From IMG/VR virus record IMGVR_UViG_3300017991_000001, positions 1-64,000 of that record: DNA of 64,000 nt, one strand, 5' to 3'. Positions within the stretch are counted from its first letter, which is position 1; the number at the start of each line of letters is the position of its first letter. The translations under genes and the position numbers were made by a program. The notes below the pieces were generated by a model. It was not told where the DNA came from. It saw only the letters and a list, made by a program, of their open reading frames with translations, and searched no databases. Of this stretch, positions 843 to 52,796 are shown piece after piece.

Positions 843-955
843 CATGCCCTCGAGCAATGAATTTCAGCGTCTAAATTACGCCTCAAAGCGCGTTACAATA
901 TACTACGCGTGACTGGCTTTCAGTCAGTTACTCTCCTGAACTACAACCTTCGGTA

Positions 956-1057
956 AATTCGCGTCAGGCCTGCGAGATACCCACCGCGCGCACAGGCGCG
1001 TTGGCAGGATAAGTGGCCGCGAAGGCATTGCCGTTACGCCGGAGCAATCTCCTGTAC
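956..1057 (+). ncRNA. tracrRNA-like scaffold copy 1 with anti-repeat for array 1
   Basis: Homologous to the copies at 4237, 5541 and 6167. Ends in TCTCCTGTAC (1048-1057), complementary to GTACAGGAGG of the array-1 repeat with one G.U pair. Confidence 0.85.
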
Positions 1058-1102
1058 CTACTGAACGTTGTGTTCATTTTCTCAGTTGTCGCAAGACATA
1101 GG

Positions 1103-1253
1103 GGCGGCCCCACGCGTACAGGAGGGTTTGGAAACGGAGGCAGGACAGACATTGTGCCGATTCGGCGGCCCCACGCGTACAGGAGGGTTTGGTTCACCAC
1201 GGCCTGCCAGCCCGCGAAATGCGCGGCGGCCACACGCGTACAGGAGGCTTGTG
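1103..1253 (+). CRISPR. CRISPR array 1 (mini-array): 3 repeats, 2 spacers of 32 nt
   Basis: GGCGGCCCCACGCGTACAGGAGGGTTTGG at 1103 and 1164; degenerate third copy at 1225; 61-nt period. Confidence 0.9.
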
Positions 1254-1270
1254 GACTCCCGGTAGCCGTC

Positions 1271-1351
1271 AACCACGCGCGCAAGGAAGCTCGGAAACAC
1301 GTGTTTCCGGGCCGGACACGTCGAGTCCGTGTGTGCGTGGTTTTTCGTTTT
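1271..1351 (+). promoter_or_regulatory. Palindrome/terminator-like structure between array 1 and the effector gene
   Basis: Perfect 18-bp palindrome CGGAAACACGTGTTTCCG (1292-1309), enclosed by AACCACGCGC / GTGCGTGGTT and followed by T-runs. Confidence 0.5.
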
Positions 1352-1373
1352 ACCATTCTTACAGGAGAGGAAC

Positions 1374-3362
1374 ATGGACGAGAAAAGCGCGATGGAAGAA
1401 GTGGCCAGGTTGGCCGAGGCAAACGCGGTGCGCATGGAAAAAACGGCGCGTTCTCCGCGCATCCAAGTGATGGAGTTCCGGTTTCCGACGCCGGAGGACT
1501 GGGTGAAGGGCATGCGTTATTTCAAAGCCTATGGGGCCAATATGAAGTGGTTGTTCGCCCAGGCGTCGATGTGTCTCAACCTTGCCGGCATACCCGGGTT
1601 CACGCCCAAGAAGAACCTCAACGCAACGGTCGACATGGCCCTGGCCGACGCGTTCATGAAGTTGCTGGGCGGTGAGGTGGTGAACGGAGACGGAAACGGG
1701 GACGGTAAGAAACGCGGTGCGGCTCTGTATGCCTTGCGCAAGGCCTGGATGGACCGGCAGGACGAGCTAGAGAAGGCCGAGAACGTCGGCTTCCGTTTCC
1801 CTTCCTGCATATGGGACGAGGCACGGATCTTCGTGTGGGGCCACTTGAAAAGGAAGGACCCCCGCATGAAACGACGCCACTGCGACCTGTCGGCGGCGGG
1901 CGAGCGCAAGGACGTCAACTACAACACGGAACTGTCACGCATCGTACTGCAGGCGTACGAGTGCCAAACGACCAAACGTGTGAAGTTCGCTGAGGAAACC
2001 GATCCCGTCTCGGGCGAGAAGATGCTGGTAGCCTACCTGGGCATCGTGAAGGGCGTGAGCACGCGGGTCATCCTCGACGGTTGGTTCGAGCGGCTGGTCA
2101 GGAAGGAGGTGATCGAGAACGGCAAACGCGTGATGAAGGTCGTGCGCGAGCGGGACCGCTTTGAGATGGAGCCGCGAGCCAAGGGCGTCGTGGAGAATAT
2201 CCTCTCCGGTGAATACACGCTGCGTCGGGGCGAGTTCTACTTCCGCAAGCGCCGCAGCAAGGGCGGGCCCCGCAAGCTACGTCCCTTCCTGGATCTTTGT
2301 TACGACCCTCATGCCAAACGCACTGCCCGCCAGCTTAAGAAGGAGGAAGAGGAGGGCGAGACCACCAAGCGTGGCATGCGCTACGCGGCGCTGTTCTTCC
2401 ACAAGACGGACGGCGTGGGTAAGGACGAAGGGCTTGTTTATTTCCCCCACCTGTCAACCGACATCACGACAAGCAAGGAGAAGTTGGACAAGTACCGGTT
2501 CTATTCCCCGCCCGTGAACAACATGATGGGTGTACTGCACGATATCCGGGCGCGGCGCAACGCCGTCGTCCACCGCAAGCGTTCGGCGCTCGGGGTTCGC
2601 GAGTTCCGCACCGCCATCAAGAAGAAGGAGAAGTTGTACACGTTGCGGCGGGAGAAGTTCATCACGAAGAACATGAACATCATGGCGAACGACTTCGTGC
2701 GCTGCCTGCGAAGCTGGAACGTGGGCAACGTGATCATGCCGTGCGTGCCCAAGAACATCGAGGTGATGGGCGAGTCGTTCCCGTGGGCCGCGTTCGTCGA
2801 TATCATGCACACCAAGTGTGACGACGCGGACATCATCTTCCTGACCGGCGACGCGCACCTGGAAGCGCTGCAGGCTGCGGCCAACGAGGAGACCGCCGCC
2901 ATCAGGGCACGTGATGATCTGGAGGACGAGGAGAAGGAACGGGCCATCAAGGTCATCAAGGAACGCACCAAGGCCCACAAGGAAATGCTCTCCGGCAACA
3001 TCTCGGAGCGCGCGGACACGCTCATCGAAACCATTGAGAAGAAACTCGAGGAGCGGGGTATGCGCAAGGAGGAGGACGAGGAGTCCCTTCTCGAAGAGGA
3101 AAGCAAGAGCAAGAAGAAGAGGAAACCCCGCAAGCGCGTGAAGCCGGTGCGGAAGGTCATGGTCAAGACGAAGGACGATGACGGCAGGACTGTGAAAAAA
3201 GACGCCAGCAAACTCCGCACGAAGACGCGCAAGCGTGCGGACCCCAAGGCGAAGCACGAGAAGTGCTGGGCTCGCCACAGGGGAGGACAGCAGGGCGAAG
3301 TCGAAATGAAGGTTTTCGAGCAGGAAGAGGCTAAGAGGAAAGACAGGAAATCAGGAGGATAA
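1374..3362 (+). CDS. Nuclease-dead TnpB/Cas12f-like type V effector with C-terminal charged extension (662 aa)
   Basis: RBS AGGAGAGG before ATG 1374. Cas12f-like wedge segment ILSGEYTLRRGEFYF...FLDLCYD. The RuvC-I position reads MRYAALFFH (no D). Arg/Lys-rich bridge helix, then KNMNIMANDFVRCLRSWNVGNVIMPCV (RuvC-II, no E) and FPWAAFVDIMHTKCDDADIIF. No Zn finger or RuvC-III. Flanked by CRISPR arrays. Confidence 0.8.
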   Translation: MDEKSAMEEVARLAEANAVRMEKTARSPRIQVMEFRFPTPEDWVKGMRYFKAYGANMKWLFAQASMCLNLAGIPGFTPKKNLNATVDMALADAFMKLLGGEVVNGDGNGDGKKRGAALYALRKAWMDRQDELEKAENVGFRFPSCIWDEARIFVWGHLKRKDPRMKRRHCDLSAAGERKDVNYNTELSRIVLQAYECQTTKRVKFAEETDPVSGEKMLVAYLGIVKGVSTRVILDGWFERLVRKEVIENGKRVMKVVRERDRFEMEPRAKGVVENILSGEYTLRRGEFYFRKRRSKGGPRKLRPFLDLCYDPHAKRTARQLKKEEEEGETTKRGMRYAALFFHKTDGVGKDEGLVYFPHLSTDITTSKEKLDKYRFYSPPVNNMMGVLHDIRARRNAVVHRKRSALGVREFRTAIKKKEKLYTLRREKFITKNMNIMANDFVRCLRSWNVGNVIMPCVPKNIEVMGESFPWAAFVDIMHTKCDDADIIFLTGDAHLEALQAAANEETAAIRARDDLEDEEKERAIKVIKERTKAHKEMLSGNISERADTLIETIEKKLEERGMRKEEDEESLLEEESKSKKKRKPRKRVKPVRKVMVKTKDDDGRTVKKDASKLRTKTRKRADPKAKHEKCWARHRGGQQGEVEMKVFEQEEAKRKDRKSGG

Positions 3363-3364
3363 CT

Positions 3365-4207
3365 GTGAACAAAATCAGACCCGCTGTCGTTCCACCCCCC
3401 GCGATCATGTACACCCCGACGGGGGCGGGATTGCCGGACACGCAGTTTAAGAGCGTACTAGCAGCCGTAAGCTCTGCGATCTGCGGAAGCTACAAGCGAC
3501 ACAAGAAGTTGGTGAGAGACACACTACACAAGCATGGACCGCTATTGAGCTGCATGGACCAGGAGCAGCGAGACACGCTGATGGAGTCCATCGAAGGGCA
3601 GGGCGTTACGTACAGGGAAGTGGATCGCGTACTTTCCTGCTACAGCGTGGTGCCTCGTTACATAGGCTTGGCGCCGGCACTGGTGGACAACAGCGCGGTA
3701 AGCGTGTTGTGGTGGAACAACCTTCCAAAGCGCGTCAAGCAGGACGCGTTGGCTGACAAGCTGGTACGCGTGAAGCGTGCCAACAGTTGGGTGCAGAAGA
3801 AGTTTTCGGACCTCACCCCGAAAGACGTGCGGCAGGTGTTCGATGTGGGTGACGGAAGCAAAGGGTACCTGCCCGTACGCACGCAGCATACTGCGCCGCG
3901 TGCCCGCAAAAGCGTGTACATGCAACCCGCGGGGCCGGTGTCGGTCAACGAGGACGACCCCAACAAGTTCCTCATCGAGGTCACCAGCAAAGGCAAGCGA
4001 GAAGTGGTGGCCATGTCCGAGCACGAGATGAAGTACACGCTCGGACAGGCGCGCGTGCTGACGGGAAGGAACGCGGTGGATTGGGACGCGGTCGAGAAGG
4101 AGCTGCGCGATTTAATCGCGACGTGGCGCGCGTCCAGGTCCAAGCATAAGGCCGTGTTGGCGACCTGCGCCGACGAAGTCGAGAAAATATTGGACGGCAA
4201 CGTGTAG
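3365..4207 (+). CDS. Hypothetical protein, operonic partner of the dead Cas12f-like effector (280 aa)
   Basis: GTG start 2 nt after the effector stop, with AGGAGG RBS; no recognisable motif. Confidence 0.8.
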   Translation: MNKIRPAVVPPPAIMYTPTGAGLPDTQFKSVLAAVSSAICGSYKRHKKLVRDTLHKHGPLLSCMDQEQRDTLMESIEGQGVTYREVDRVLSCYSVVPRYIGLAPALVDNSAVSVLWWNNLPKRVKQDALADKLVRVKRANSWVQKKFSDLTPKDVRQVFDVGDGSKGYLPVRTQHTAPRARKSVYMQPAGPVSVNEDDPNKFLIEVTSKGKREVVAMSEHEMKYTLGQARVLTGRNAVDWDAVEKELRDLIATWRASRSKHKAVLATCADEVEKILDGNV

Positions 4208-4236
4208 CTGAACGAAGCAGCGGTACGATGTGCGGA

Positions 4237-4338
4237 AATTCGCGTCAGGCCTGCGAGATGTCCGCCGCGCACACTGAGTGCGTTGGCAGGGTAAGTGGCC
4301 GTGAAGGCGCTTCGGCGCCGGATACGTCTTCCCTACAC
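4237..4338 (+). ncRNA. tracrRNA-like scaffold copy 2 with anti-repeat for array 2
   Basis: Stems CCTGC/GCAGG, GCGCAC/GTGCGT and GGCGC-TTCG-GCGCC. Anti-repeat TCTTCCCTACAC (4327-4338) pairs with GTATAGGGAAGA of the repeat. Confidence 0.88.
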
Positions 4339-4384
4339 ATCCGCATGTCGTACCGCTACTCTGTTTCTAACCCTACATGTTGGT

Positions 4385-5474
4385 GTCGCACCCACGCGTA
4401 TAGGGAAGATTGGACCCAATTTTAGATACTCGCTGCAGCGCCGTCGTCGCACCCACGCGTATAGGGAAGATTGGAGAAACGATTTGACTAGGCATGCGGA
4501 GTCGTCGTCGCACCCACGCGTATAGGGAAGATTGGGCGCCCAGCGCGTCCGCCACGTGTTCGCGCTCGTCGCACCCACGCGTATAGGGAAGATTGGAAAG
4601 CTCCCTCGAAGGCGTCGCCCAACAGGCCGTCGCACCCACGCGTATAGGGAAGATTGGGCTTACGCCGGCAAGCTCGGCATTGAGGGCCTGTCGCACCCAC
4701 GCGTATAGGGAAGATTGGCAGCGGCTGGACCGGCGACTCGGTCTGCCCCAGTCGCACCCACGCGTATAGGGAAGATTGGCGTATCATGAACAGGTCGCAC
4801 CCACGCGTATAGGGAAGATTGGCGGCTCGAGGTGTTCGCTACAGGAGCGTCGCACCCGCGCGTATAGGGAAGATTGGGCACCCTTCCCGCGAGTCGCGTG
4901 CTGCAGCACGTCGCACCCACACGTATAGGGAAGATTGGTCCTCCCTCAGCGTTTCCTCCGCTTTGCAGTCGTTGCACCCACGCAGATAGGGAAGATTGGA
5001 AGGGCCAACCAAAGGCACTGCCGGTCGCCAAGTCGCACCCACGCGTATAGGGAAGATTGGTTTTGGAGGCGAGCAACGCGGCGACGGGCAGCGTCGCGCC
5101 CACGCGTATAGGGAAGATTGGCTAAAGGATGTTGATCTCCTGTCGCACCCACGCGTATAGGGAAGATTGGATCGATAGGCGTAATTCCGGTTCAGGTGCC
5201 GTGTCGCACCCACGCGTATAGGGAAGATTGGGCCCCCGATCCCGAAATCGAAAAGACGGACCCGTCGCACCCACGCGTATAGGGAAGATTGGGCTTCGAT
5301 GTTCTGTGTCGTAGCCTTGAGCGGGTCGCACCCGCGCGTATAGGGAAGATTGGGTCCTTTTCCCGGACCGCCACGGGTTCGGGCGGTCGCACCCACGCGT
5401 ATAAGGAAGATTGGCCGTCAAGAATCGCCCCAACACCGCGTGTGCGTCGCACCCACGCACACGAGGAGGGTTGG
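4385..5474 (+). CRISPR. CRISPR array 2: 19 repeats, 18 spacers
   Basis: Repeat GTCGCACCCACGCGTATAGGGAAGATTGG (29 nt). Spacers mostly 32 nt, also 14, 26, 20 and 31. A degenerate last repeat at 5446 indicates + orientation. Confidence 0.98.
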
Positions 5475-5540
5475 GTCCTGGGTTCGTTGTCGCGCTTACG
5501 TGCTGGGAATGCATACAGACTACAGCGGTGGACACATGTA

Positions 5541-5638
5541 AATTCGCGTCAGGCCTGCGAGATGTCCGCCGCGCACACTGAGTGCGTTGGCAGGGTAAGT
5601 GGCCGTGAAGGTGCTTGCACCGGATACGTCTTCCCTAC
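5541..5638 (+). ncRNA. tracrRNA-like scaffold copy 3 with anti-repeat for array 3
   Basis: Near-identical to copy 2, with a compensatory hairpin GGTGC-TT-GCACC; anti-repeat TCTTCCCTAC at 5629-5638. Confidence 0.88.
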
Positions 5639-5680
5639 CATGTGTCATGCCGTTGTTCTCTTTATGGTCCATATGTTGGT

Positions 5681-6133
5681 GTCGCGCCCACGCGTATGGG
5701 GAAGGTTGGGCTTATGCACGCATCAGGGAGATCAGCGCACCGTCGCGCCCACGCGTATGGGGAAGGTTGGTCGTGGAGACGAGCAAAGCCGCGACGGGCG
5801 CCGTCGCGCCCACGCGTATGGGGAAGGTTGGTACGCCGAGTGCCTCGGACAACTGCGGGACAAGCCGCGCCTGCGCTTATAGGGAAGATTGGCCATCCCG
5901 CCTGGGGACAAATGGAGATTGCGTCGCGCCCACGCGTGTAGGGAAGGCTGGAAACTGTATGACCGTGTGGCGATCGGCCATGTATCGCGCCTACGCGTGT
6001 AGGGAAAGCTGGCTGCATCTGGCGTCAGATTTCATGCTGCGTAGGTAGGACCCACGCGTGTAGGGAAGGCTGGGCGCAGCTCGCCGTTATCGGAGCACGA
6101 AACCTGTTGAACCCACCCGCGTAAGAAGGCTGG
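5681..6133 (+). CRISPR. CRISPR array 3: 8 repeats, 7 spacers
   Basis: GTCGCGCCCACGCGTATGGGGAAGGTTGG at 5681, 5742 and 5803; progressively degenerate copies at 5864, 5923, 5984, 6045 and 6106. Confidence 0.95.
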
Positions 6134-6166
6134 ATCACCGAATAAATAGCAGTGCGGTATGTGGAG

Positions 6167-6272
6167 AATCGCGTCAGGCCTGCGAGATGTCCGCCGCGCG
6201 CACAGGCGCGTTGGCAGGATAAGTGGCCGTGAAGGCGCTTCGGCGCCGGATACGCTCTCCTCACACATACGT
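6167..6272 (+). ncRNA. tracrRNA-like scaffold copy 4 with anti-repeat for array 4
   Basis: Homologous scaffold. Anti-repeat GCTCTCCTCACACATACGT (6254-6272) pairs with ACGTA(C/T)G(C/T)GAGGAGGGC of the array-4 repeats. Confidence 0.88.
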
Positions 6273-6316
6273 CCGCATGTCGTGCTGCTGGTTAATCCAT
6301 ACCTCTGTATCTTGGC

Positions 6317-6772
6317 GTCAAACCTACGTACGCGAGGAGGACTGGCTAACGCGCCCAGAATGAGAGAATACCATGATGTCAAACCCATGTACGCGAGGAG
6401 GACTGGACGTTCACCGTCGCTATCTAAAGCGCCTTGCGGTCAAACTCACGTACGCGAGGAGGGTTGGGCTACCCTCAGCTACCGGCGGACGAGGACACGG
6501 TCAAACCCACATACGCGAGGAGAGCTGGGCCCACCTAGGACGGGCGGGCGGATTGCAACCGTCAAACCCACGTACGCGAGGAGGGCTGGTGATAAGCGAG
6601 GAGAACTAAGACCGAGGCAAGGTCAAACCCACGTATGCGAGGAGGGCTGGGCTGGCGTGGATGATGGTCGTTACCAGGATACGTCAAACCCACGTATGTG
6701 AGGAGGGCTGGCCTCGGCATGAACTGCTGCCTGCGTACTCGGCGTCGAACCCACGTACGCGAGGAGGGTTGG
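6317..6772 (+). CRISPR. CRISPR array 4: 8 repeats, 7 spacers of 32 nt
   Basis: Consensus GTCAAACCCACGTACGCGAGGAGGGCTGG at 6317, 6378, 6439, 6500, 6561, 6622, 6683 and 6744; exact 61-nt period. Confidence 0.95.
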
Positions 6773-6832
6773 CGTCGCTTGATTTCTTTCAGCGGGACCA
6801 TGCAATCGAATTAACAAGCGAACCCGCAAGGG

Positions 6833-6857
6833 GAGGTGCCAGCGGCGCCTTCTTTTA
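6833..6857 (+). terminator. Probable terminator ending the CRISPR locus
   Basis: GAGGTGCC-AGC-GGCGCCTT followed by CTTTT, convergent with the minus-strand operon. Confidence 0.55.
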
Positions 6858-6858
6858 G

Positions 6859-7551
6859 CTATTCGGTCATGTAACCCGCGTCCAGCATCATCTCCCGATA
6901 CATCTTCAGCGTGTGAGCGATCTGCTCTTCGTCCAGCACGTCCTCCCAGGCGCCGGGCTCGCCCTTCGTCTCGGAGATGTGCTTGCCCCTGAGCTGGGTC
7001 TTCATGTCAGCGGTGTCCTCATGCAGCGAGTCGGTGAAGGCCTTCACCGTGACGGGGTCGACCTCGTGGGCGATGCGCTTCACGTCTTCCGGCATGGGAG
7101 GCAGCCCGAGGTACTCGCGGATGCGGTCCACCGCGGCGGGGAGGTCGTTGTAGACGTCCTCGTACTTGAGCATCAGGATGGCGGGGTGCTTCTTCATATA
7201 GAAGTACTCGGTGCTCATCTTCTTCGGGTAGCGCAGGCGCTTCTTGTAGGGCGTGCGTCCGAACTTGGGCAGGCGCTGCAGCGAGGCCATCACGTCCAGC
7301 GGGTTGCGGTAGGTGTAGATGATGAAGGCCCGGCGGACGATGTCGAAGGGCGGCTCGTAGTGGTGGACCTTGACAACCCGCCAGCGCGTGCTGTTGAGCT
7401 GCTGGCGAAGCTCCTCGTCGACCTGGGCGGCCGAGGTGCCGGCGTAGTCGTAGGGGTGGCCCCGGGCTTCCAGGAGCTTCTGGACCGTCATGTAGGACAG
7501 GGTTGATCCGGTTCGATACATTCCGTTGCAGATAACGAACTGCTTGTGCAC
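6859..7551 (-). CDS. Sulfotransferase (Sulfotransfer_1/3-like)
   Basis: 5'-PSB loop GMYRTGST, VVKVH, 3'-PB YRNPLDVMAS, LKYED; GTG start inferred. Confidence 0.85.
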   Translation of the reverse strand: MHKQFVICNGMYRTGSTLSYMTVQKLLEARGHPYDYAGTSAAQVDEELRQQLNSTRWRVVKVHHYEPPFDIVRRAFIIYTYRNPLDVMASLQRLPKFGRTPYKKRLRYPKKMSTEYFYMKKHPAILMLKYEDVYNDLPAAVDRIREYLGLPPMPEDVKRIAHEVDPVTVKAFTDSLHEDTADMKTQLRGKHISETKGEPGAWEDVLDEEQIAHTLKMYREMMLDAGYMTE

Positions 7552-8270
7552 GGTTCCACCTCTGGGATCTCGTACCCGGCGTGCTTCATCATCCGACCAC
7601 ACTGCGCCACGCATGCCCTTATGGTAGCGGCTGATAGGTGTTTACGCCAGGTGTCAGGTTTGCCCAAATCGTCGGAAATGTGGTGGTCGCGCACGTTTGT
7701 GATGTTCTTGATGGTGTCGTTGGGCATCGTGTCGGCGTGGGCCTTGACCACCTCAGCCGAGTGCCGGCGGGCGATCTCCCTGGCTTCGGGCAGCGTCACG
7801 TGCAGGTCCAGGAAGTTGGAGACCATGCAGACGACGCGGGGCACGTCCAGGATCATCTCCTCGTACTTGATCATCAGGCAGGGCTTCCAGTGCAGCTGGT
7901 CGAAGTAGTCATCCTCGTAACGGTCCCAGCCGTCGGGGATGTACTCGCCCCACTCGCCGGTCTGGGCCGTGCAGCGCTTCTGGGCGGAGGCGGCTATGTC
8001 CAGGGGGTTGCGGTAGGTGAACAGGAACCTGGCCTCCCTCATGACGTCGACCTGCCGGCCGCGCAGCACGTAGAAGTGCACCTTGGCCAGCATGGGAGGA
8101 GGCGTCGGGTAGGTGATCACGAAGCGGCCATAGCTGTCGCGGAGGCAGTACGGGGTGGACTCAATCAGCTCCACGTCGCCGAAGTTCAGCTCCAAGAGCT
8201 CACGTGCGATGTTGTAGACCAGCGTGGACCCCGAGCGGTACATCCCGTTGCAGACCACGAATCGACTCAC
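7488..8270 (-). CDS. Sulfotransferase, tandem paralogue
   Basis: GMYRSGST, LAKVH, YRNPLDIAAS, IKYEE; GTG start inferred. Confidence 0.85.
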   Translation of the reverse strand: MSRFVVCNGMYRSGSTLVYNIARELLELNFGDVELIESTPYCLRDSYGRFVITYPTPPPMLAKVHFYVLRGRQVDVMREARFLFTYRNPLDIAASAQKRCTAQTGEWGEYIPDGWDRYEDDYFDQLHWKPCLMIKYEEMILDVPRVVCMVSNFLDLHVTLPEAREIARRHSAEVVKAHADTMPNDTIKNITNVRDHHISDDLGKPDTWRKHLSAATIRACVAQCGRMMKHAGYEIPEVEPCTSSSLSATECIEPDQPCPT

Positions 8271-9073
8271 AGCGCCCCCCTCTCTGTTTTGCTCATCAAC
8301 TCCTTGGCCCGATCCGGTTCCATCTCGCCCATGGCGACCATGAGCAGGCGCGCGTAGTTCTTCTGCCGTTCGCTGGCGTTCTCGTAGGCCCTCTTGCCAA
8401 TATAGACGGTCACGCCGTAGACCAGCAAGCCCATGATCAGGATGACCCCGATCACCGTGATCACCGCCGACATGGGCCACATGTTGACGTCGCGCCCGGC
8501 GCGCATCTCGGTCTGGAGCGTGGTTTGCATCTTCGTGAGCTTGTTCGACAAGCCCACTTGCCCCGAGGCTGTGGCGTCTGCCTGTCCCGACATGTGGCCG
8601 ACCTTGGTGTTGATATCGGACAGCGCCTTCATCGTGTTGTCCAGCTTCGCCTCCATCTTGTTGGTGACGTTGACGTTGGCCTCGAACTTGGCGTTGATCG
8701 TGTTCTCCAGGCTCGCCATGGCTGTCATGGTATTGGTCAGCTTCGTGTCGATGTCGGCTTGCATCTTATTGTCGATCTTGGCCTCCAAGTTAATCAGGCC
8801 CTTTAGCGCCACCTCCATCTTCTGGAGCTGCGCCACGATGTGGCCGGAGAGCTGGTTGCTGTTGGAGGACATGTCGGCCCGCACGCGGGCGGCGGTGTCC
8901 TCCACGATCTTGTCCGTGTCCACCTTCTCCACCGCTATTTCCGGTGCCGGCATCGAAATCTCAGGTTTGTGGTCGATGATCGTCGGGGCCATCTTGGTCT
9001 TGTTGTCGGCGATGCAGCCGGTCAGCCATATCAACAAAATCAACAACGGCATCAATGACTTGAGCTTGGGCAT
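8267..9073 (-). CDS. Lipoprotein with coiled coil and C-terminal TM helix (unimolecular spanin-like)
   Basis: Signal peptide with lipobox LTGC, long heptad-like helix, TM segment AVITVIGVILIMGLLVYGVTVYI. Confidence 0.55.
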   Translation of the reverse strand: MPKLKSLMPLLILLIWLTGCIADNKTKMAPTIIDHKPEISMPAPEIAVEKVDTDKIVEDTAARVRADMSSNSNQLSGHIVAQLQKMEVALKGLINLEAKIDNKMQADIDTKLTNTMTAMASLENTINAKFEANVNVTNKMEAKLDNTMKALSDINTKVGHMSGQADATASGQVGLSNKLTKMQTTLQTEMRAGRDVNMWPMSAVITVIGVILIMGLLVYGVTVYIGKRAYENASERQKNYARLLMVAMGEMEPDRAKELMSKTERGAL

Positions 9074-9540
9074 GGGTACTCTCCCTGGTGGGTTCCGGTG
9101 TGAATGGCATTCTACCTCGTAGTTCCTCTCCGCATATCGAAAATCTTGGTGCTTCCCGACAGCTAAAACAAACGCCCCGGCGCGTTAGTATTTCCTAATG
9201 CCGATTGGCCCGTGGCCAGCCGGTAAAAGCGTAGAGAACGTGGTTAACCGTGGTTTTCGTGGAGGTGAACGTGGAGAAGAGACAGCGTCCCCTACCGATG
9301 AAGCGCCGGATGCAAATGCGCCGGAAGCTGTTTCGTGACATCGCTGAGTTCCTCAAGAAGCTTCGCTGAAGCTTGAGGGGCTTGCGGTGAGGGCACGCGG
9401 AAAGGAGGGCACTCGTTGAATCGTAGTTGCTCGAACCGGAGTCAGCCCGTCCCGGTTCGGGGCCGCAGACAAGGGCAAACCTGCCCCGCCGGGGCAGGTT
9501 ATACACTTTCTCGCTAACGAACGAACGGAAGGAGAAGGAG

Positions 9541-9888
9541 ATGAAAAAGGTGAAGAAAAAGAAGGGCAAGGAGTTCGAGCTGATCGTGTTGGCGCTCCTC
9601 GGACACTTGGGCGAGTTCATGAAGGGGTTTCTGTCCTTCCAGAAGAAGGAGGACAAGCGCGCTCAGGAACGCCACCAACTCGAGATGCAGAACTGCGCTC
9701 GGGACATCAGGCTCAAGGACCTCGAGATCGAGCGCCTTGAGGCGGAGGTCAGCAAGACCCGCAAGTCCGCGTCCGTGAAGGGCAAGAAGGAAAAGAAGTC
9801 CAAGAAGGACAAGAAGGCCAAGAACAACGGCAAAACGCCTGAGGATATCACCGTCCCCGAGCGGGGCGGCGTTGCCACCACGGAATGA
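9541..9888 (+). CDS. Hypothetical Lys-rich coiled-coil protein
   Basis: AAGGAG RBS before ATG 9541; 115 aa. Confidence 0.6.
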   Translation: MKKVKKKKGKEFELIVLALLGHLGEFMKGFLSFQKKEDKRAQERHQLEMQNCARDIRLKDLEIERLEAEVSKTRKSASVKGKKEKKSKKDKKAKNNGKTPEDITVPERGGVATTE

Positions 9889-9955: not shown

Positions 9956-11779
9956 TCAGTAGGGGTCGCGGAACGCGTTGGGGGGTTCGGCCAGGTTGAG
10001 CTGCTCCTCGGTCAGCTTGATGCCCTGGACCTCGGACAGGTCGGGGTACCGCCGCGTGTAGTGCCAGATGGCGCAGGAGCCGTAGTTGAGCGCGTGGGCG
10101 AAGTCGTCCGGCATCTTGGGTCGCCGTATGATGGTGTAGACATCCTGGCGCCGGGCGACCTCCTTGCGCTCCTCGATGAGGTTGAGCAGGTCGGAGGTGA
10201 TGTTCTTGCTGGACTCGTACTCCGGGAGCAGGATCTTGCAGGCCTTGACACACACGGCCTGCAGGACCAGCGAGCGGGGTTTGTCCAGCTGGTAATAGCC
10301 CCTGAGCTCCCCTTCCGCCGGTTTCTTGTACACGACCACGTCCCGTGTGGGCAGGTACATGTACATGAAGGGCACGATCCGGTCGAGGGGCAGCCCGGCC
10401 TGTATCATCAGGGTTTCGCGCACGCCGCCGGCCCCGCCGTAGTCATGCGCGAAGAACATGCAGCCCGCTTCCCGATAGAGGTCCAGCAGGCGCCGGGCCT
10501 CCCAGTCGTGGGCCGCCGCCAGGGGGAAGCGCTCGCAGAAGTGGCATTCCAGCCCGCCGCCGATGGGGTTGAGACCGACAAGTGCAACGGACGTAAAGGA
10601 GGTGCCCTCCTCCTGACCGCCGCCGCCCCAGTCCACGCCCATGGCACGGATGGGGCAGCGGCGGAACTTGTCGATCATCCTGTCGAACTCGTTGGGCCCC
10701 AGGCGCGAGGCGCGCTTGATGTCGGTGACGGTGGTCAGGTTGACGCCCACGTCGGCCGACTCGCCGAGGACCTCGTTGAGGAACCTCGACTCGTTGTACC
10801 CGAACTTGCCGTCCCGCTTGGCGATCAGCTCGCCCCACTTCTCCTCGTCGCGGTAGTGCGAGGGGACGATGGGCTGCGGGACGTGGAAGCCCCAGAAGTC
10901 GGCGTGCTCGTCGGCGTCGGTGTGGTACCAGTGGCCGTTGGCGGCGTCGATGAGGTTCTTGCATTTGGCGCAGCACAGGCCCTTGCGCTCGATCATCTTC
11001 ATGAGGTCGGCCTGGAAGCAGGCCATGTTCCAGTAGCCGCAGTGGGTGCATTTGGTGACCCATTCGGCCTTGGAGGAGTCCTGCCACAGCGCCTCGATGG
11101 TGTTGTCGAGCGTCTTGGGCGTGCCGGAGTAGGAGGAGGCGCGGATCTTGGAATACGACATGCACTCCCGGATGATCGGGATGAAGTCGTAGTCCATGTC
11201 CTGGATCTCGTCGTGGTCGATGATGTCGCAGGCGATGCCGCGGATGCGGTCGCAGTCCAACAGCGCGAAGGAGAAGAACAGCATGCTCCCGTTCGCGAAG
11301 GACCGCTGCAGCACCGCGTTGGTGGCCGAGGTGTCGACCAGGAACCTGGAGATCGGGCTGTTCTTGATGAACGGCCGGACGTAGTTGTTGGAGAGGCGCC
11401 GGATCTGTTCGTATCGGGGGGTCACGAGCAGGGTCCGCAGGTAGGGGTGGCCGGCCGAACGCATGACGCAATTCGCCGAGAGCGTCGCGCTTTTGCCCAC
11501 CTGCCGCGCGCACTTGAGCAGCATGCGCCTGGGGATGCCCACCTTGAAGACCGGCTCCATGAAGAAGTGGTTCTCAAGGGTGTAGGGGCGCCCGTCCAGG
11601 GAGAGCAGGCCCAGCACGGGTACCAGCGTGTCGGGGTTGCGGTTACGCAGGATGTGCATCACCTGCATCACGTCGGCGAGCGAGACCTGCTCGCCGCTTT
11701 GGAAGGTATCGATGACGTTTTGTACGGACTCGGGCAGCTGGGTCTCTACCGACTCGGCAAGTGAGGAGGCTGTATCCAT
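9956..11779 (-). CDS. terL: Terminase large subunit (GpA-like)
   Basis: Walker A KCARQVGKS, Walker B DHDEIQD, GTP coupling motif, CxxC pairs, nuclease motifs MGVDWGG and PDDFAHALNY. Confidence 0.92.
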   Translation of the reverse strand: MDTASSLAESVETQLPESVQNVIDTFQSGEQVSLADVMQVMHILRNRNPDTLVPVLGLLSLDGRPYTLENHFFMEPVFKVGIPRRMLLKCARQVGKSATLSANCVMRSAGHPYLRTLLVTPRYEQIRRLSNNYVRPFIKNSPISRFLVDTSATNAVLQRSFANGSMLFFSFALLDCDRIRGIACDIIDHDEIQDMDYDFIPIIRECMSYSKIRASSYSGTPKTLDNTIEALWQDSSKAEWVTKCTHCGYWNMACFQADLMKMIERKGLCCAKCKNLIDAANGHWYHTDADEHADFWGFHVPQPIVPSHYRDEEKWGELIAKRDGKFGYNESRFLNEVLGESADVGVNLTTVTDIKRASRLGPNEFDRMIDKFRRCPIRAMGVDWGGGGQEEGTSFTSVALVGLNPIGGGLECHFCERFPLAAAHDWEARRLLDLYREAGCMFFAHDYGGAGGVRETLMIQAGLPLDRIVPFMYMYLPTRDVVVYKKPAEGELRGYYQLDKPRSLVLQAVCVKACKILLPEYESSKNITSDLLNLIEERKEVARRQDVYTIIRRPKMPDDFAHALNYGSCAIWHYTRRYPDLSEVQGIKLTEEQLNLAEPPNAFRDPY

Positions 11780-34535: not shown

Positions 34536-35116
34536 TCAACTTCGAGCGGTGCTACGACCGTTCGGACGAGGACCTCCAGCGGTTCCTGATCTTCTGCATC
34601 TGCGTTGCCGGCAAGAACGCCAAGACCGTCGACGCGAAGGTGTGCGAGTTTCTGGAGCCGTGCGAACACCGCAGGGAGACACCCTTCGAGTTCCTGCGGT
34701 ACCTGGTCAACATCGAGCGCTTGGACTTCGCGCTCGCGAAGGTCAAGATGGGGAAGTACAGGCTGCTCGAGCGGTCGTTTACGTACCTGGTCGAGAAAGA
34801 GTTGGACCTCCGGTCTTGTACGGTCGATCAGCTGGAAATGGTGCCCGGCATCGGTCCCAAGACCGCGAGGTTCTTTCTGCTGTACACGCGGGAGTACTTC
34901 CGGGGGGCGGTACTCGACACGCACGTGCTCCAGCACCTGGTGGCTTGCGGATGCAAGAAGGTGCCGAAGCAGACACCGCAGGACCCGAAGGTGTACCGGA
35001 AGTGGGAGGCGGTCGTGCTGGAGCTGGCCGCGGCCAACGGAATGGACCCGGCCGAGTACGACAACGAGATCTGGAAGAGCCGGAGCCCCTCAGCGGAGTT
35101 GGGGGTGTCTCCGTAG
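34532..35116 (+). CDS. HhH-GPD DNA glycosylase-like protein (OGG-like)
   Basis: LEMVPGIGPKTARFFL HhH motif with catalytic Lys; AVLDTHVL. Confidence 0.85.
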   Translation: MINFERCYDRSDEDLQRFLIFCICVAGKNAKTVDAKVCEFLEPCEHRRETPFEFLRYLVNIERLDFALAKVKMGKYRLLERSFTYLVEKELDLRSCTVDQLEMVPGIGPKTARFFLLYTREYFRGAVLDTHVLQHLVACGCKKVPKQTPQDPKVYRKWEAVVLELAAANGMDPAEYDNEIWKSRSPSAELGVSP

Positions 35117-35179
35117 CTCAACAGGCAGAGCGACGCTCTCTAAAAGCGGTGGTTCCGGGTTCGAGTCCCGGCGGAGGCA
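35107..35179 (+). tRNA. Amber suppressor tRNA (anticodon CUA), CCA not encoded
   Basis: Acceptor GTCTCCG/CGGAGGC plus A73; D-arm GCTC/GAGC; anticodon loop CTCTAAA; T-arm CCGGG-TTCGAGT-CCCGG. Confidence 0.9.
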
Positions 35180-35308
35180 TTTATCGTCGATTATTGGTGT
35201 AGTCAGTGCGGAAAGCCGATTTACAGCGGCAGTCGATTAGTCTGTGATGATTGCAAAGATGCCAGGTACTTCGGGGATAAAACTCCGCAGGGGGAAGATC
35301 TCCAAACC

Positions 35309-45452: not shown

Positions 45453-47081
45453 ATGGGTTACAACGACGAAGTGCCGTCCGGCCAGGGGCTGGATGGTCTG
45501 CCCGGCTTTTTCATCAAGAAGTCAGGCGCCCCGCACACGACGCAGTTCCTGAACTTCGGCAATCCGACCGTCTTCAGGATACTGCCGGAGATCAACGTCA
45601 ACGGGCATGAGGTGCCCTGGCGGCTGGGTCCGGGGCAGGGCGAGTTCTCGAACTGGATCAAGGGTTTGAGGGTCGCCACCAAGATGGGGGTGAACGGCAA
45701 GTTCACCTGCATCGCCAACGTGAAGGGCAAGCCCCCTCGGGAGCTTGGCCCCATCGACGTCTTTGCCAATGCCGTACACAAGGCCGTCGAGCGCAACAAG
45801 CGCGCCTTCCCGGAGGAGTGGGAGGACTGGGTGACGTATCTCCCCAAAACCGGCATCAAGCTGGGCATCCCGGACTATCACGCCGGCGTGCAGGGCCTCC
45901 TGTTCGAGCACGGAGGCAAGCAGTTCATGGACGAGAAGGGTAATCCGCAGCCCAGGCACCCGGTCATCCTGTTGATGAAGACCAGTGCCCGGTTCAAGCT
46001 GCAGGACATGTGCAACGTGGAGGTGCCGGGCTACTCGGGCGCCCCCGAGGATTACAACCGGCGCTATCCGATCGGGGACGCCTTCTCCCTCGGGGGTGGC
46101 CACCTGCTCAAGATCTTCCCGGTGCCGGACGACGGCTCCACGCGGGCCCACTACGACATCGAGGTGTTGCAGGAGGTGGTGCCCATTCCGAAGTCGGTGT
46201 CCATGGAATGGCGTCCTTGGGACGAGATCCTGGACTACCTGGACGAGGCCCAGCAGGTTAACCTCGTCGTCAACCACTTCCCGCCGGAGGTGGTGGACTT
46301 CGCGCTCAGCCAGGGACAGTACGGACATCTCGTGCCGCCCCACGTGAAGGGCGCGTTCGAGCAGATGCGTTTGCGGATGCAGGGTGGCGGCGGCGTGGCC
46401 GTGCAGCCGTACGGCACGCAGGGGTATCAGCAACCTCAGCAGCCCCAGCAGCCCCAGCAGCCCCAGCAGCCGCAGGGGCAGATCCAGGCGGCTCCGGTAC
46501 CCGCCGAGGTACCCGCCGTGGACTCCCCCGAGTTGAGGCAGAGCGTGGGCACGCAGGCAACTCAGCCGGCTGCCACGCCTCCCGCCACCGGACCCATCGT
46601 CAACTTCGGGGAGCAGAACTATACGCAGCCCTCGCCCACGGCGAGTCCTGCGCAGCCCGCCCAGCCCGCCCAGCCGGCGCAGCCCGCACAACCCGTGCAG
46701 CCTGCCCAACCGGCGCAACCGGCGCAGCCCGCTCAGCCCACCCAACCGGTCAGGGCTGTAAACTTCGGTGGTGCGGAGGCACAGACTCCGATGCCGGCAC
46801 CGGAATCTCAGGCCACTACGGCTGCACCACCGCCTCCGCAGCCGCCCAACGACCCGGACGTGCCGCCGCCTCCACAGGTGGCGCCCGCGCCCAACGCCGC
46901 ACCCGCGGCGGCAGCAGCCACGCCTGAGCAGTTCAACCAGCCTGTGGCCGGGGGTCAGGCTCCGCAGCAACCCATCGGCGATCCCGCGCAGACGCAGAAC
47001 GCGCAGGCCGATACGCTCGCCCGTCTCCGGGCGGCGCGTGAGCAGGTCGACGGACAGGCTCCGCAGCAACCGCAGCAGTAG
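45453..47081 (+). CDS. Probable ssDNA-binding/replication protein with a long Gln/Pro-rich tail
   Basis: Lies between polymerase and RecA; FRILP motif typical of phage SSBs; ~230-aa low-complexity tail. Confidence 0.5.
   Translation: MGYNDEVPSGQGLDGLPGFFIKKSGAPHTTQFLNFGNPTVFRILPEINVNGHEVPWRLGPGQGEFSNWIKGLRVATKMGVNGKFTCIANVKGKPPRELGPIDVFANAVHKAVERNKRAFPEEWEDWVTYLPKTGIKLGIPDYHAGVQGLLFEHGGKQFMDEKGNPQPRHPVILLMKTSARFKLQDMCNVEVPGYSGAPEDYNRRYPIGDAFSLGGGHLLKIFPVPDDGSTRAHYDIEVLQEVVPIPKSVSMEWRPWDEILDYLDEAQQVNLVVNHFPPEVVDFALSQGQYGHLVPPHVKGAFEQMRLRMQGGGGVAVQPYGTQGYQQPQQPQQPQQPQQPQGQIQAAPVPAEVPAVDSPELRQSVGTQATQPAATPPATGPIVNFGEQNYTQPSPTASPAQPAQPAQPAQPAQPVQPAQPAQPAQPAQPTQPVRAVNFGGAEAQTPMPAPESQATTAAPPPPQPPNDPDVPPPPQVAPAPNAAPAAAAATPEQFNQPVAGGQAPQQPIGDPAQTQNAQADTLARLRAAREQVDGQAPQQPQQ
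46428..46748 (+). repeat. Coding 9-bp tandem repeats (QQP and AQP units)
   Basis: CAGCAGCCC-type units at ~46428-46475 and GCNCARCCN-type units at ~46650-46748. Confidence 0.85.
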
Positions 47082-51256: not shown

Positions 51257-52796
51257 TCGGCAACGAACTGAGGGAGGACGAGCTTTTCCACCTCAACCTG
51301 GGCGACGCCTGGGTTGAGGTGAAGCTCCCTTGCAGGAAGTGCAGGGGCAAGGGGCACGTATCGGACACGCGGAAGGGGCTGGTGACTATGCGCCTGTCCA
51401 TTCCTGTCCACGGGGGCAAGAACATGGACGTGGTGGGCTGCGACGAGTGCGGCGGCAACGACACGAAGTTTGGCAAGGGTTACGTGATACGCCCGATTCG
51501 CTTGAGCCAGCTGAAGAGGGTTCTGACTTGAACGATCGAACGGTGGAGGAGCAGGTGAGTGACAATGAGAACAAGGCCGTGCAGCGCTTTCTGGCCCTGC
51601 AGACGTCGTTCAAGCGTTTCGGCATGACGATCGAGTTCTTGGCCGGCCGGAGTGGCAACTACATCATCAGGAGCAAGGAAGGCCGGGAGGTGCTGAAGTT
51701 CGACAGCATCGGCGAGCTGGAGCACGCGTTCAACGTGATGCTGGCGTTCGGCGCGGCGACCTCCGTGAAGATCGAAACGATGATGAGCATCGCCGAGGGG
51801 CTGGTCAACGCGGCGCTGGCAAGAGACAAGACGAAGACGGCCAGGGTGTCGTACGTGCAGGGCGTCTGCGAGCTGATGGCGGAGTGTTCGAGTTACCACA
51901 AGGCTACGGACGTGCCTTTGAAAGAGCGGGCCACCAACGTGGCCAAGCACATGGGGTTGGAGAACATTTACTAGGGAGGGCACATGGCCAAGAAGAAAAA
52001 GAAGAAGTCGGGTGGCAAGCGGGCCACCTTTGCGGGGGTCAAGCGGACCTCCAAGCCGGTGGTGGCACCGTCAGCGAACATGCTGCCGTCGCCCAAGGGC
52101 GCCATCACCAAGGCGGAGGACAAGCCCGAGGAGCTGACGCCGGAGGATCGCAAGGTGGCCAACAAGCTCTTCAAGGCGAAGGCCAAGGAGCTGATCGCGC
52201 GGGCAACGGAAAACAACAAGCACGACCTGCTGCTGAAGTACGACGTCGGCGAGTTCGCCGCAAAGGTGTTCACCACCAAGACCTACGGTGACCACTCGGC
52301 GGAGGAGATCGCCAAGGAGCTGGACGTGCATCAGGACACCGTGCGCATGTATCATCGCTTCTACTGTCGGTACAGCCGCGAGAAGGTGGAGAAGTTCGCG
52401 GAGCTGAAGATGTCCTGGTCGTTGATCTATCCCATGATCTCCGTCGAGGACGACGCCAAGCGCGCCGAGCTGGAAGATAAAGCCAGCAAGGGTATGACAC
52501 GCGACGAGATGCGCGAGGAGGCCAAAGCAGCCAACAAGGAAGCCAACGAGGCTGCCGACGCTGACGGCAAGAAGCGCGACAAGCGCGGCGGGCTGCAGGA
52601 TGCCCAGGCGTTCCGCAACTGCAAGAAGGCGGCGGATGACATGTGCAGCAAGATCGATCAGTATCTCGATGCCTGCACGAATTTGAAGAACATCACCAGC
52701 CCTGACAAGCTGGAGAACCTGGCCAACAAGCGCGAGGAGGTGCGCGAGGGGCTGGTCGAGCTGCGCAACCGTATCGATAAGGCCTTGGAGGCCTAG
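51253..52796 (+). CDS. Three hypothetical ORFs (51253-51531 Zn-ribbon, ~51528-51974, 51984-52796 basic HTH/coiled-coil)
   Basis: Contiguous ORFs; EEIAKELDVHQDTVR HTH-like segment in the last. Confidence 0.65.

What the first reader, a model, noticed from the sequence alone, without database searches (positions are those of the whole stretch)
956..6345. Each array has its own anti-repeat that co-varies with its repeat (orthogonal tracr:crRNA pairs)
Directly visible pairings. Module 1: TCTCCTGTAC with repeat GTACAGGAGG. Module 2: TCTTCCCTA with TAGGGAAGA. Module 3: TCTTCCCTA(C) with TGGGGAAGG/GTAGGGAAGG. Module 4: GCTCTCCTCACACATACGT with ACGTA(C/T)G(C/T)GAGGAGGGC. Core mismatches are G.U wobbles, which work only on the + strand RNA. 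The scaffold also shows compensatory changes: GCGCAC/GTGCGT versus GCGCGC/GCGCGT, and GGCGC-TTCG-GCGCC versus GGTGC-TT-GCACC. Scaffold and array are co-linear, so scaffold + first repeat + first spacer could fold as a natural single guide, resembling an omegaRNA-to-tracr/crRNA intermediate. Different duplexes could insulate or separately regulate the guide sets.
Basis: seen in the sequence. Interest (0 to 1): 0.9.

Follow-up and report, generated by a model that had tools for sequence, protein, structure and literature searches.

The report
Per-array tracr-like scaffolds, jumbo phage
A 211-kb phage carries four CRISPR arrays, each preceded by its own copy of a structured guide-scaffold RNA whose variable tail matches that array's repeat, next to a very divergent and probably nuclease-dead TnpB/Cas12-like gene; this per-array arrangement did not turn up in the literature searches run here.

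Summary
Four + strand modules (940-6800) each hold a ~110-nt conserved core, a variable pyrimidine tail and a 29-nt-repeat array. The tails complement the 3' part of the cognate repeat, 3-6 nt before the spacer. Only 2 of 720 tail-to-repeat assignments pair as well as the real one. A 28%-identical relative in a second phage lineage has the same layout with two modules and unrelated sequences.

Every scaffold is enclosed by a 10-18 bp closing stem between its 5' flank and the sequence just 3' of the tail. The stem sequence differs in all six modules, has many G.U pairs, and the cognate assignment is the unique best of 720. It gives the best evidence for a + strand RNA.

"Four orthogonal pairs" is overstated. 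Modules 2 and 3 share one tail, energy gaps are small, and RNA-only cofolding shows the duplex in only 2 of 6 modules. A cis single guide would need a pseudoknot.

The 662-aa protein matches no sequence profile. Predicted-structure look-ups place it and its relative in the TnpB/Cas12f fold. It lacks the zinc ribbon and the RuvC-III region. A conserved 223-280-aa partner is unexplained, and no spacer targets were found.

Verdict: a new variant of tracrRNA-dependent type V/TnpB-derived systems.

The parts
871..898 (+). Promoter-like motif ending in TACAAT, upstream of module 1
   Evidence: Seen in sequence only. A similar motif (CTAAwTT...GCGTTAmAAT) lies upstream of the first module in L003 at 9117-9144. 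The sigma-70 scan found nothing.
940..1074 (+). Scaffold 1: closing stem 940-955 / 1059-1074, conserved core 958-1047, anti-repeat tail 1048-1057
   Evidence: flank duplex -19.1 vs shuffles -6.8, p 0.001; MFE contains the closing stem, z -2.2; CM 115 bits.
1103..1253 (+). Array 1: three 29-nt repeats (the third is degenerate) and two 32-nt spacers
1271..1345 (+). Strong + strand terminator-like structure with a U-tract, between array 1 and the effector gene
   Evidence: -43 kcal/mol, z -5.7.
1374..3362 (+). Effector, 662 aa: divergent TnpB/Cas12-like protein with no zinc ribbon or RuvC-III region and a K/E-rich C-terminal tail
   Evidence: No Pfam, PADLOC, NCBIfam, PHROG or PDB sequence hit. 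ESM Atlas structure hits are TnpB/Cas12f/OrfB_IS605, with TM by hit 0.56-0.65. Only one relative among 1.84 billion representatives.
3365..4207 (+). Conserved partner gene, 280 aa, with its own AGGAGG ribosome-binding site; function unknown
   Evidence: Homologous to the 223-aa gene that follows the relative's effector (25% identity, E 1e-16). No family hits.
4219..4357 (+). Scaffold 2: closing stem 4219-4236 / 4340-4357 (18 bp, 2 G.U), core 4239-4326, anti-repeat 4327-4336
   Evidence: -37.3 vs -14.0; z -3.7.
4385..5474 (+). Array 2: 19 repeats; spacers mostly 32 nt, three shortened (14, 20, 26 nt); the last repeat has an array-1/4-like 3' half
5522..5656 (+). Scaffold 3: closing stem 5522-5538 / 5639-5656, core, anti-repeat 5629-5638 (identical to scaffold 2)
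   Evidence: (-27.3 on + vs -20.9 on -).
5681..6133 (+). Array 3: 8 repeats of mixed types, degenerating towards the 3' end
6148..6289 (+). Scaffold 4: closing stem 6148-6165 / 6272-6289 (18 bp, 5 G.U), core, anti-repeat 6254-6272
   Evidence: (-28.6 on + vs -15.0 on -).
6317..6804 (+). Array 4: 8 repeats and 32-nt spacers
6826..6857 (+). Hairpin plus U-tract after array 4, possibly a bidirectional terminator shared with the convergent sulfotransferase gene
   Evidence: z -1.9.

Best explanation
This is a phage-encoded, type-V-like (TnpB-derived) RNA-guided system that uses dual guides, with one tracr-like scaffold paralog per CRISPR array.

Shown here:
- Each module is read on the + strand.
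- The scaffold folds into a conserved core closed by a long-range stem between its flanks.
- The tail just inside the 3' strand of that stem is complementary to the 3' part of the repeats of the array that follows.

Inferred:
- The closing stem lets each scaffold fold on its own within long transcripts (effector, partner, scaffold 2, array 2, and so on). It probably also serves as a double-strand RNase (RNase III-type) processing site.
- The freed scaffold pairs in trans with repeats of its array to rebuild an omegaRNA-like handle, with the spacer at the 3' end.
- The single effector binds all four scaffold variants through the near-identical core.
- The effector appears to lack the zinc ribbon and the third RuvC segment. 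The complex therefore most likely binds DNA and blocks it, in the manner of TldR or Cas12m, or it hands the target to the conserved partner protein. It is unlikely to cut by itself.
- Tail and repeat diverged together after module duplication because pairing is under selection. Orthogonality is a by-product and is only partial.
For: Architecture.

Anti-repeat covariation:
- 2 of 720 permutations score as well as the cognate assignment, and 5 of 6 modules beat shuffled tails.
- Tails and stem strands are 46-55% identical between copies, while the core is 86% identical.

Closing stem:
- Cognate duplexes are -16 to -37 kcal/mol against -7 to -14 for shuffles, and the cognate assignment is the unique best of 720.
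- The + strand beats the - strand in all six modules.
- The stem is present in the MFE of 6 of 6 modules, with z -2.0 to -3.7 for the four window modules and about -0.9 for the two L003 modules.
- Register-by-register pairs show CG to UG to UA series.
- On the formal count, 93% of cells are paired against 24-46% when the partner is slid, with 8 double-sided changes.

Second lineage: L003, L004 and L009 have scaffold + array, effector, partner, scaffold + array, with unrelated scaffold and repeat sequences. The window covariance model does not detect these scaffolds.

Other RNA evidence:
- Window repeats are unstructured on their own.
- + strand terminators follow the arrays.
- Degenerate repeats lie at the + strand 3' ends.

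Effector:
- TnpB/Cas12f structure hits for both homologs, and TnpB-type feature hits at 0.91-0.94 for P0002.
- Both homologs end in a charged tail at the same point, with no CxxC pairs.

Precedent for RuvC/ZnF-truncated RNA-guided binders: TldR (10.1101/2023.11.30.569447), dCas12f (PMC13472631), and V-C and V-M (PMC12669027).
Against: - There are no RNA data of any kind.
- The tail:repeat duplexes are short (6-12 bp), and L003 module B is not significant (p 0.16).
- With full-length partners the duplex is in the cofold MFE only for W1 and LA.
- duplexfold finds other scaffold sites of similar nominal energy.
- The tail can also pair with a purine-rich core segment that resembles the repeat.
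- Fold assignment rests on predicted models with pTM 0.43-0.48. My own AlphaFold2 models failed (pLDDT 39 and 42), and Foldseek on them was meaningless.
- I read the loss of the RuvC-I and RuvC-II acidic residues by eye, without an aligned TnpB reference.
- No protospacer was found, so DNA targeting and the biological role are untested.
- The arrays are 100% identical in the seven other contigs compared, from different samples, and no Cas1/Cas2 Pfam hit is on record within +-10 kb.
Confidence: 0.6

Rival explanations
1. Natural single guide in cis. Scaffold, leader, first repeat and first spacer act as one omegaRNA-like molecule, and the remaining repeats are secondary or vestigial.
For: Scaffold and array are co-linear, 18-60 nt apart, with no strong terminator between them. 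In L003 module B the first repeat starts only 18 nt after the stem. dCas12f systems use chimeric single guides that resemble repeats (PMC13472631).
Against: Cis pairing crosses the closing stem and so forms a pseudoknot. Arrays of up to 19 well-conserved repeats argue that all units are used. The tail matches the repeats throughout each array, not only the first one.
Confidence: 0.15
2. The scaffold is a structured RNA with another role, such as a processing or insulator element, a riboregulator, or a decoy. Its tail pairs with its own core, and the crRNAs work without any tracrRNA.
For: A purine-rich core segment mimics the repeat, and it is paired with the tail in the L003 MFEs. RNA-only cofolding rarely forms the trans duplex. 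L003 repeats can form their own hairpins.
Against: Tail and repeat change together across six modules. Window repeats have no intrinsic structure. One scaffold per array is conserved in two lineages whose effectors are only 28% identical.
Confidence: 0.12
3. The upstream elements are DNA-level CRISPR leaders or promoters copied along with the arrays, and the complementarities arise by chance.
For: Leaders are often conserved between arrays of one genome. No RNA data exist.
Against: The part next to the first repeat is the least conserved and the distal core the most, which is the reverse of what leaders show. Double-sided and G.U-compatible changes keep an 18-bp stem that works better on the + strand. 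Permutation tests give 1/720 and 2/720. No adaptation genes lie nearby.
Confidence: 0.03
4. The RNA architecture is as in the best explanation, but the complex is an active nuclease. Either the catalytic triad sits at alternate positions, or the partner protein supplies a nuclease or the missing RuvC part.
For: An invariant Asp (D307) and Glu (E467) exist in the RuvC-like region. TnpB-like proteins can place a catalytic residue at an alternate position (10.1101/2023.11.30.569447). The partner is conserved and translationally coupled: it overlaps by 14 nt in L003, and in the window the gap is 2 nt with a ribosome-binding site.
Against: No zinc ribbon and no RuvC-III-like motif in the effector or the partner. 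The partner matches no nuclease family. The relative frame of the two genes differs between lineages, so there is no conserved frameshift fusion.
Confidence: 0.2

Closest known systems
tracrRNA-dependent miniature type V systems (Cas12f/V-F and the TranC 'transposon-CRISPR intermediate' clades)
   Same: A small TnpB-like effector. A CRISPR array with the spacer 3' of the repeat. A separate scaffold RNA whose anti-repeat pairs with the repeat next to the guide. This fits the idea that an omegaRNA/reRNA split into tracrRNA plus crRNA (10.64898/2026.03.27.714800, discussion citing its ref. 12).
   Different: Here there is one scaffold paralog per array (4 in one lineage, 2 in the other), upstream of and co-linear with the array. 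Each is enclosed by a covarying closing stem. The effector has no detectable sequence similarity to any profile and lacks the ZnF/RuvC-III region. A conserved partner gene is present.
TldR (TnpB-like nuclease-dead repressors)
   Same: TnpB-derived, with deteriorated RuvC and C-terminal truncation removing ZnF/RuvC. Often phage-borne. Associated with a non-transposase gene. Acts by RNA-guided DNA binding (10.1101/2023.11.30.569447).
   Different: TldRs use one adjacently encoded single guide with a fixed 9-16-nt guide and no CRISPR array. Here there are 38 repeats in four arrays and a split guide. TldRs are recognisable as TnpB by sequence, and this protein is not.
Nuclease-inactive type V effectors (Cas12c/V-C, Cas12m/V-M, predicted V-O and V-P; CRISPR-associated dCas12f)
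   Same: Array-guided binding without target cleavage as the interference mode (PMC12669027). dCas12f has C-terminal truncations and putative structured guides upstream of arrays (PMC13472631).
   Different: No profile of those subtypes matches. They are not described with several tracr paralogs or with closing stems. Cas12m needs no tracrRNA (my knowledge, not tested here).
Phage-encoded compact type V systems (Cas12j/CasPhi, Caslambda, Cas12r)
   Same: Large-phage genomes carrying an effector plus arrays without an adaptation module. These are thought to act in conflicts between mobile elements (10.64898/2026.04.20.719267).
   Different: Those effectors are active RuvC nucleases. CasPhi needs no tracrRNA (my knowledge, not tested here). 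Here the RuvC looks incomplete, and a scaffold RNA accompanies each array.

Membership tests
Type V CRISPR-Cas (Cas12) | Single effector of TnpB ancestry with a RuvC-like domain | tested here: inconclusive
   Predicted-structure and language-model look-ups put both homologs with TnpB/Cas12f/OrfB_IS605. No sequence profile or PDB sequence matches, and the AlphaFold2 models were unusable.
Type V CRISPR-Cas (Cas12) | Complete RuvC I-II-III catalytic motifs with a zinc-ribbon (TNB) insert | tested here: not met
   Both homologs run into a charged helical tail right after the RuvC-II-like segment. They have no CxxC pairs and no RuvC-III-like motif. This was read by eye, without a reference alignment. 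Inactivated subtypes are nonetheless accepted in type V (PMC12669027).
Type V CRISPR-Cas (Cas12) | Adjacent CRISPR array, with the guide 3' of the repeat | tested here: met
   Four arrays on the effector strand, with terminators and repeat decay at the 3' ends. The tail pairs 3-6 nt upstream of the spacer.
tracrRNA-dependent class 2 systems | A non-coding RNA with an anti-repeat complementary to the repeat | tested here: met
   Complementarity and covariation in six modules. Expression, duplex formation and processing are not testable with these tools.
tracrRNA-dependent class 2 systems | tracrRNA:crRNA duplex formed and bound by the effector | not testable with these tools
   RNA-only cofolding is equivocal, with the duplex in the MFE of 2 of 6 modules.
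TldR | Nuclease-dead TnpB homolog recognisable within the TnpB tree | tested here: inconclusive
   The fold-level lead points to TnpB, but HMMER against 1.84 billion representatives finds no TnpB.
TldR | Single omegaRNA-like guide with a fixed guide and no CRISPR array | tested here: not met
   Four arrays with 38 repeats.
TranC | TnpB-like active nuclease using crRNA plus a tracrRNA derived from the transposon RNA | tested here: inconclusive
   The split-guide logic is met. Nuclease competence looks lost. There is no transposon context or TnpA within +-10 kb. Clade membership could not be tested because no TranC sequences were available.
Adaptive CRISPR locus | Cas1-Cas2 adaptation module and spacer turnover | tested here: not met
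   No Cas1/Cas2 Pfam hit on record within +-10 kb in either lineage. The arrays are identical in the seven other contigs compared, from different samples. The rest of the 211-kb genome was not scanned.
Known Rfam RNA families | Match to a curated covariance model | tested here: not met
   Only a tRNA reaches gathering score in the window.

The most novel reading that the evidence does not exclude
A previously undescribed CRISPR-associated lineage in which a RuvC-truncated TnpB descendant and an obligate partner protein form the effector. Each array is served by its own tracr paralog that is excised from polycistronic RNA through a covarying closing stem. The tail toggles between a repeat-mimicking core segment (closed state) and the crRNA repeat (open state). 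This would be a guide-loading mechanism, and possibly a partner-dependent output, not known for any type V subtype.
Probability: 0.3. Interest if true: 0.85.

Novelty: new variant of a known kind. Interest (0 to 1): 0.72.

Why it matters
If confirmed, it would matter in four ways.

1. It is a natural case of several tracr paralogs, each co-evolving with its own array and feeding one effector. That is a ready-made test bed for how tracr:crRNA specificity evolves, and a source of partly orthogonal guide scaffolds.

2. The closing-stem design shows how structured guide scaffolds can be embedded in long transcripts and still fold or be processed one by one.

3. The effector family is invisible to every sequence profile tried. 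It was found in only two phage lineages among 1.84 billion cluster representatives. This extends the known range of TnpB-derived, probably non-cutting, RNA-guided proteins in jumbo phages.

4. The conserved partner may reveal a new output for RNA-guided DNA binding.

Tried and rejected
Searches that found nothing:
- Sequence-family searches of effector and partner in Pfam, PADLOC, NCBIfam, PHROGs and PDB sequences.
- Word-indexed searches of 5.8 billion proteins with single sequences and with alignments found only the two lineages.
- tblastn against GenBank phages found nothing useful.

Structure prediction:
- AlphaFold2 on two-sequence alignments gave pLDDT 39 and 42.
- Foldseek on those models returned only noise and was disregarded.

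Scaffold searches:
- Rfam found only a tRNA.
- The covariance model built from the four window scaffolds does not detect the L003 scaffolds even with filters off. Homology of the scaffolds between lineages is therefore unproven, and only the architecture is shared.
- The scaffold core 20-mer was scanned in IMG/VR only, where it hit only the source contig. The JGI metagenome and GTDB scans used spacer patterns, not the scaffold.

Spacer targets:
- Nothing in the window or the fetched loci.
- GenBank phages and PLSDB plasmids gave only marginal hits that span the repeat-spacer boundary, taken as chance.
- Exact seeds of six guides (five single spacers, plus one degenerate pattern shared by the two similar spacers a2_s12 and a3_s2), scanned across IMG/VR, GTDB genomes and JGI metagenomes, hit only the arrays themselves.

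Ideas rejected:
- A read-through or frameshift fusion of effector and partner. The relative frames differ between the two lineages, and each partner has its own ribosome-binding site.
- Genome-wide TAG recoding despite the CUA tRNA. TAG ends many high-GC3 ORFs.
- Stability of the scaffold core alone as evidence of structure. Its z-scores are about 0 without the flanks.

Full report
WHAT IS THERE. The window is the first 64 kb of a 211,084-bp viral contig, IMGVR_UViG_3300017991_000001. Phage hallmark genes are present: large terminase, DNA polymerase, DnaB-like helicase and an SbcC-like protein.

Between 940 and 6860, everything lies on the + strand:
- module 1 (scaffold plus a 3-repeat array);
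- a strong terminator-like structure at 1271-1345 (z -5.7);
- a 662-aa ORF (1374-3362);
- a 280-aa ORF with its own ribosome-binding site (3365-4207);
- modules 2, 3 and 4 back to back (19, 8 and 8 repeats; 29-nt repeats, mostly 32-nt spacers);
- a hairpin with a U-tract at 6826-6857.

The conserved 20-mer of the scaffold core occurs exactly four times, against 0.02 expected.

CHECK OF THE OBSERVATION. The tail that follows the last core hairpin is complementary to the 3' part of the cognate repeat and ends 3-6 nt before the spacer.
- The duplexes are 9-12 bp in the window, 10 (+5) bp in L003 module A, and only 6 bp in L003 module B.
- Against shuffled tails, five of six modules are significant (p 0.0025-0.04).
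- Of 720 ways to assign six tails to six repeats, only 2 pair as well as the real assignment.
- Between copies the core is 86% identical, while tails are 46% identical. The variable repeat positions are the ones that face the tail.
- The two compensatory changes inside the core are confirmed.

Limits of the observation:
- Modules 2 and 3 have the same tail.
- The younger repeats of array 3 merely tolerate it through two G.U pairs. Its older repeats pair much better (-26 kcal/mol).
- For the anti-repeat alone, a minus-strand RNA would pair about equally well.

In each module the 16-18 nt just upstream of the core pair with the 16-18 nt just downstream of the tail:
- 940-955 with 1059-1074;
- 4219-4236 with 4340-4357;
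- 5522-5538 with 5639-5656;
- 6148-6165 with 6272-6289.

Evidence for this closing stem:
- Cognate duplex energies are -19 to -37 kcal/mol against -7 to -14 for shuffles.
- The cognate assignment is the single best of 720.
- The + strand is better than the - strand in all six modules, for example -28.6 against -15.0 for module 4, whose stem has five G.U pairs.
- In register, modules 2, 4 and 3 show classic series such as C-G, U-G, U-A at one pair, and G-C to A-U at others.
- Over the whole structure, 93% of cells are paired against 24-46% when the 3' partners are slid. Eight pairs change on both sides, which 5 of 500 shuffles reach.
- The stem is part of the MFE in 6 of 6 modules. It lowers z to between -2.0 and -3.7 in the four window modules; in the two L003 modules z stays at about -0.9. 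The core alone is no more stable than shuffles.

This is the best evidence that the elements act as + strand RNAs.

INDEPENDENT REPLICATE. An exhaustive HMMER search of 1.84 billion cluster representatives found one relative of the 662-aa protein, P0002 (575 aa, 28% identity, E 4e-20).

It sits in 163-198-kb contigs from other samples of apparently the same study series. The layout is the same: scaffold + array, effector, overlapping 223-aa gene, scaffold + array, terminator.

The partner proteins are homologous (25% identity, E 1e-16). The two L003 scaffolds are 92% identical to each other but differ in the tail (CCATCCCCAC against CCACCCAAAC) and in the flanks. Their arrays have different repeats (…GTGGGGATGGGCC against …GCGGGTGGGCC).

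Neither scaffold nor repeat sequences can be aligned with those of the window. A covariance model of the window scaffolds does not find them. The architecture is therefore what is conserved, and not the sequence. That argues for function.

THE PROTEINS. Neither protein matches Pfam, PADLOC, NCBIfam, PHROGs or PDB sequences.

The ESM Atlas holds predicted models of both effectors (pTM 0.43 and 0.48). Their nearest structural neighbours are overwhelmingly TnpB / Cas12f-like_TNB / OrfB_IS605 clusters, with 300-380 aligned residues and TM by hit of 0.5-0.65. For P0002 the language-model neighbours are also TnpB-type, at 0.91-0.94. I take this as a good lead (about 0.8) and not as proof. My AlphaFold2 runs failed.

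Reading the two-sequence alignment against the usual TnpB order gives this picture:
- The strand where RuvC-I Asp is expected reads GMRYAALFF / KRSAYVYIK.
- The RuvC-II position reads NVIMPC / LFALPGP.
- After the W..F…H.KC segment both proteins continue into a charged helical tail, with no CxxC pairs and no RuvC-III motif.

Truncations of this kind are what define TldR and dCas12f (10.1101/2023.11.30.569447; PMC13472631). The residue assignments were made by eye. An alternate catalytic arrangement, or a contribution from the partner, is not excluded.

MECHANISM. The steps shown and the steps inferred are set out under Best explanation. In short, the scaffolds are structured + strand RNAs closed by a stem, with a tail matched to the adjacent array. 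I infer stem-dependent folding or processing, trans pairing with repeats, loading into one effector through the shared core, and DNA binding without cutting (or partner-dependent action).

The cis 'single guide' idea would need a pseudoknot across the closing stem. 'Orthogonality' is partial, with three classes and small energy gaps, and RNA-only cofolding is equivocal. An alternative pairing of the tail with a repeat-like purine segment of the core exists in both lineages and remains unexplained.

BIOLOGY. No protospacers were found. The arrays are identical in the seven other contigs compared, from different samples. No adaptation genes are on record within 10 kb. The target and role are therefore open: the host, a rival element, or the phage's own regulation.

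COMPARISON AND NOVELTY. It works most like tracrRNA-dependent miniature type V/TranC systems, combined with a TldR/Cas12m-like dead effector. It fails or leaves open the sequence-level membership tests for all of them.

Full-text searches found no description of natural per-array tracr paralogs or of closing-stem scaffolds. The held library is incomplete, so this is not proof of absence.

I rate it a new variant of a known kind, with interest 0.72.

Noticed in passing
window 35106-35180 (+): A tRNA with a CUA (amber-reading) anticodon, called tRNA-Pyl by ARAGORN and scoring 61 bits in Rfam. TAG still ends 30 of 92 high-GC3 ORFs, and coding signal is lost after it, so there is no genome-wide recoding. 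Only 51318-51974|TAG|51975-52796 keeps GC3 0.87 across the TAG.
   Followed up: partly
window 4780-4793, 4823-4848, 5122-5141; 5061-5092 vs 5771-5802: Array 2 has three shortened spacers (14, 26 and 20 nt). One spacer of array 2 and one of array 3 are 26-nt near-copies with 3 mismatches, as if aimed at variants of a single target. No target was found.
   Followed up: partly
window 5446-5474 and 5864-5892: The last repeat of array 2 has an array-1/4-like 3' half. The fourth repeat of array 3 has an array-2-like 3' half. This suggests recombination between arrays, and the scaffold copies are likewise mosaic.
   Followed up: no
window A6 column 77 (e.g. 4292); L003 9182-9188: A purine-rich core segment (GGCAGG[G/A]TAAG in the window, GGGGTGA in L003) resembles the repeat segment bound by the tail and can pair with the tail. 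This may be a closed/open switch, or it may be coincidence.
   Followed up: partly
window 871-898; L003 9117-9144: A similar promoter-like motif (CTAAwTT … GCGTTAmAAT) lies upstream of the first module in both lineages. The sigma-70 scan did not call it.
   Followed up: no
window 6859-9073 (-): Three convergent genes. Two have sulfotransferase domains (Pfam E 2.5e-13 and 7e-8), an unusual auxiliary function next to the CRISPR locus.
   Followed up: no
window 46428-46749 and 9777-9824: 9-nt tandem repeats. The first set lies inside ORF 45453-47081, which has no PHROG hit, and would encode a Q/P/A-rich low-complexity stretch.
   Followed up: no
L009 8593-8692 vs L003 12771-12866: The IMG/VR copy of the second lineage has one repeat-spacer unit partly duplicated relative to L003. 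This is array rearrangement without new spacers.
   Followed up: no
window 9956-11779 (-): The large terminase has only relatives of 28% identity or less among GenBank phages (the best is Salmonella phage Arash). The phage lineage itself is therefore poorly sampled, and the host is unknown.
   Followed up: partly
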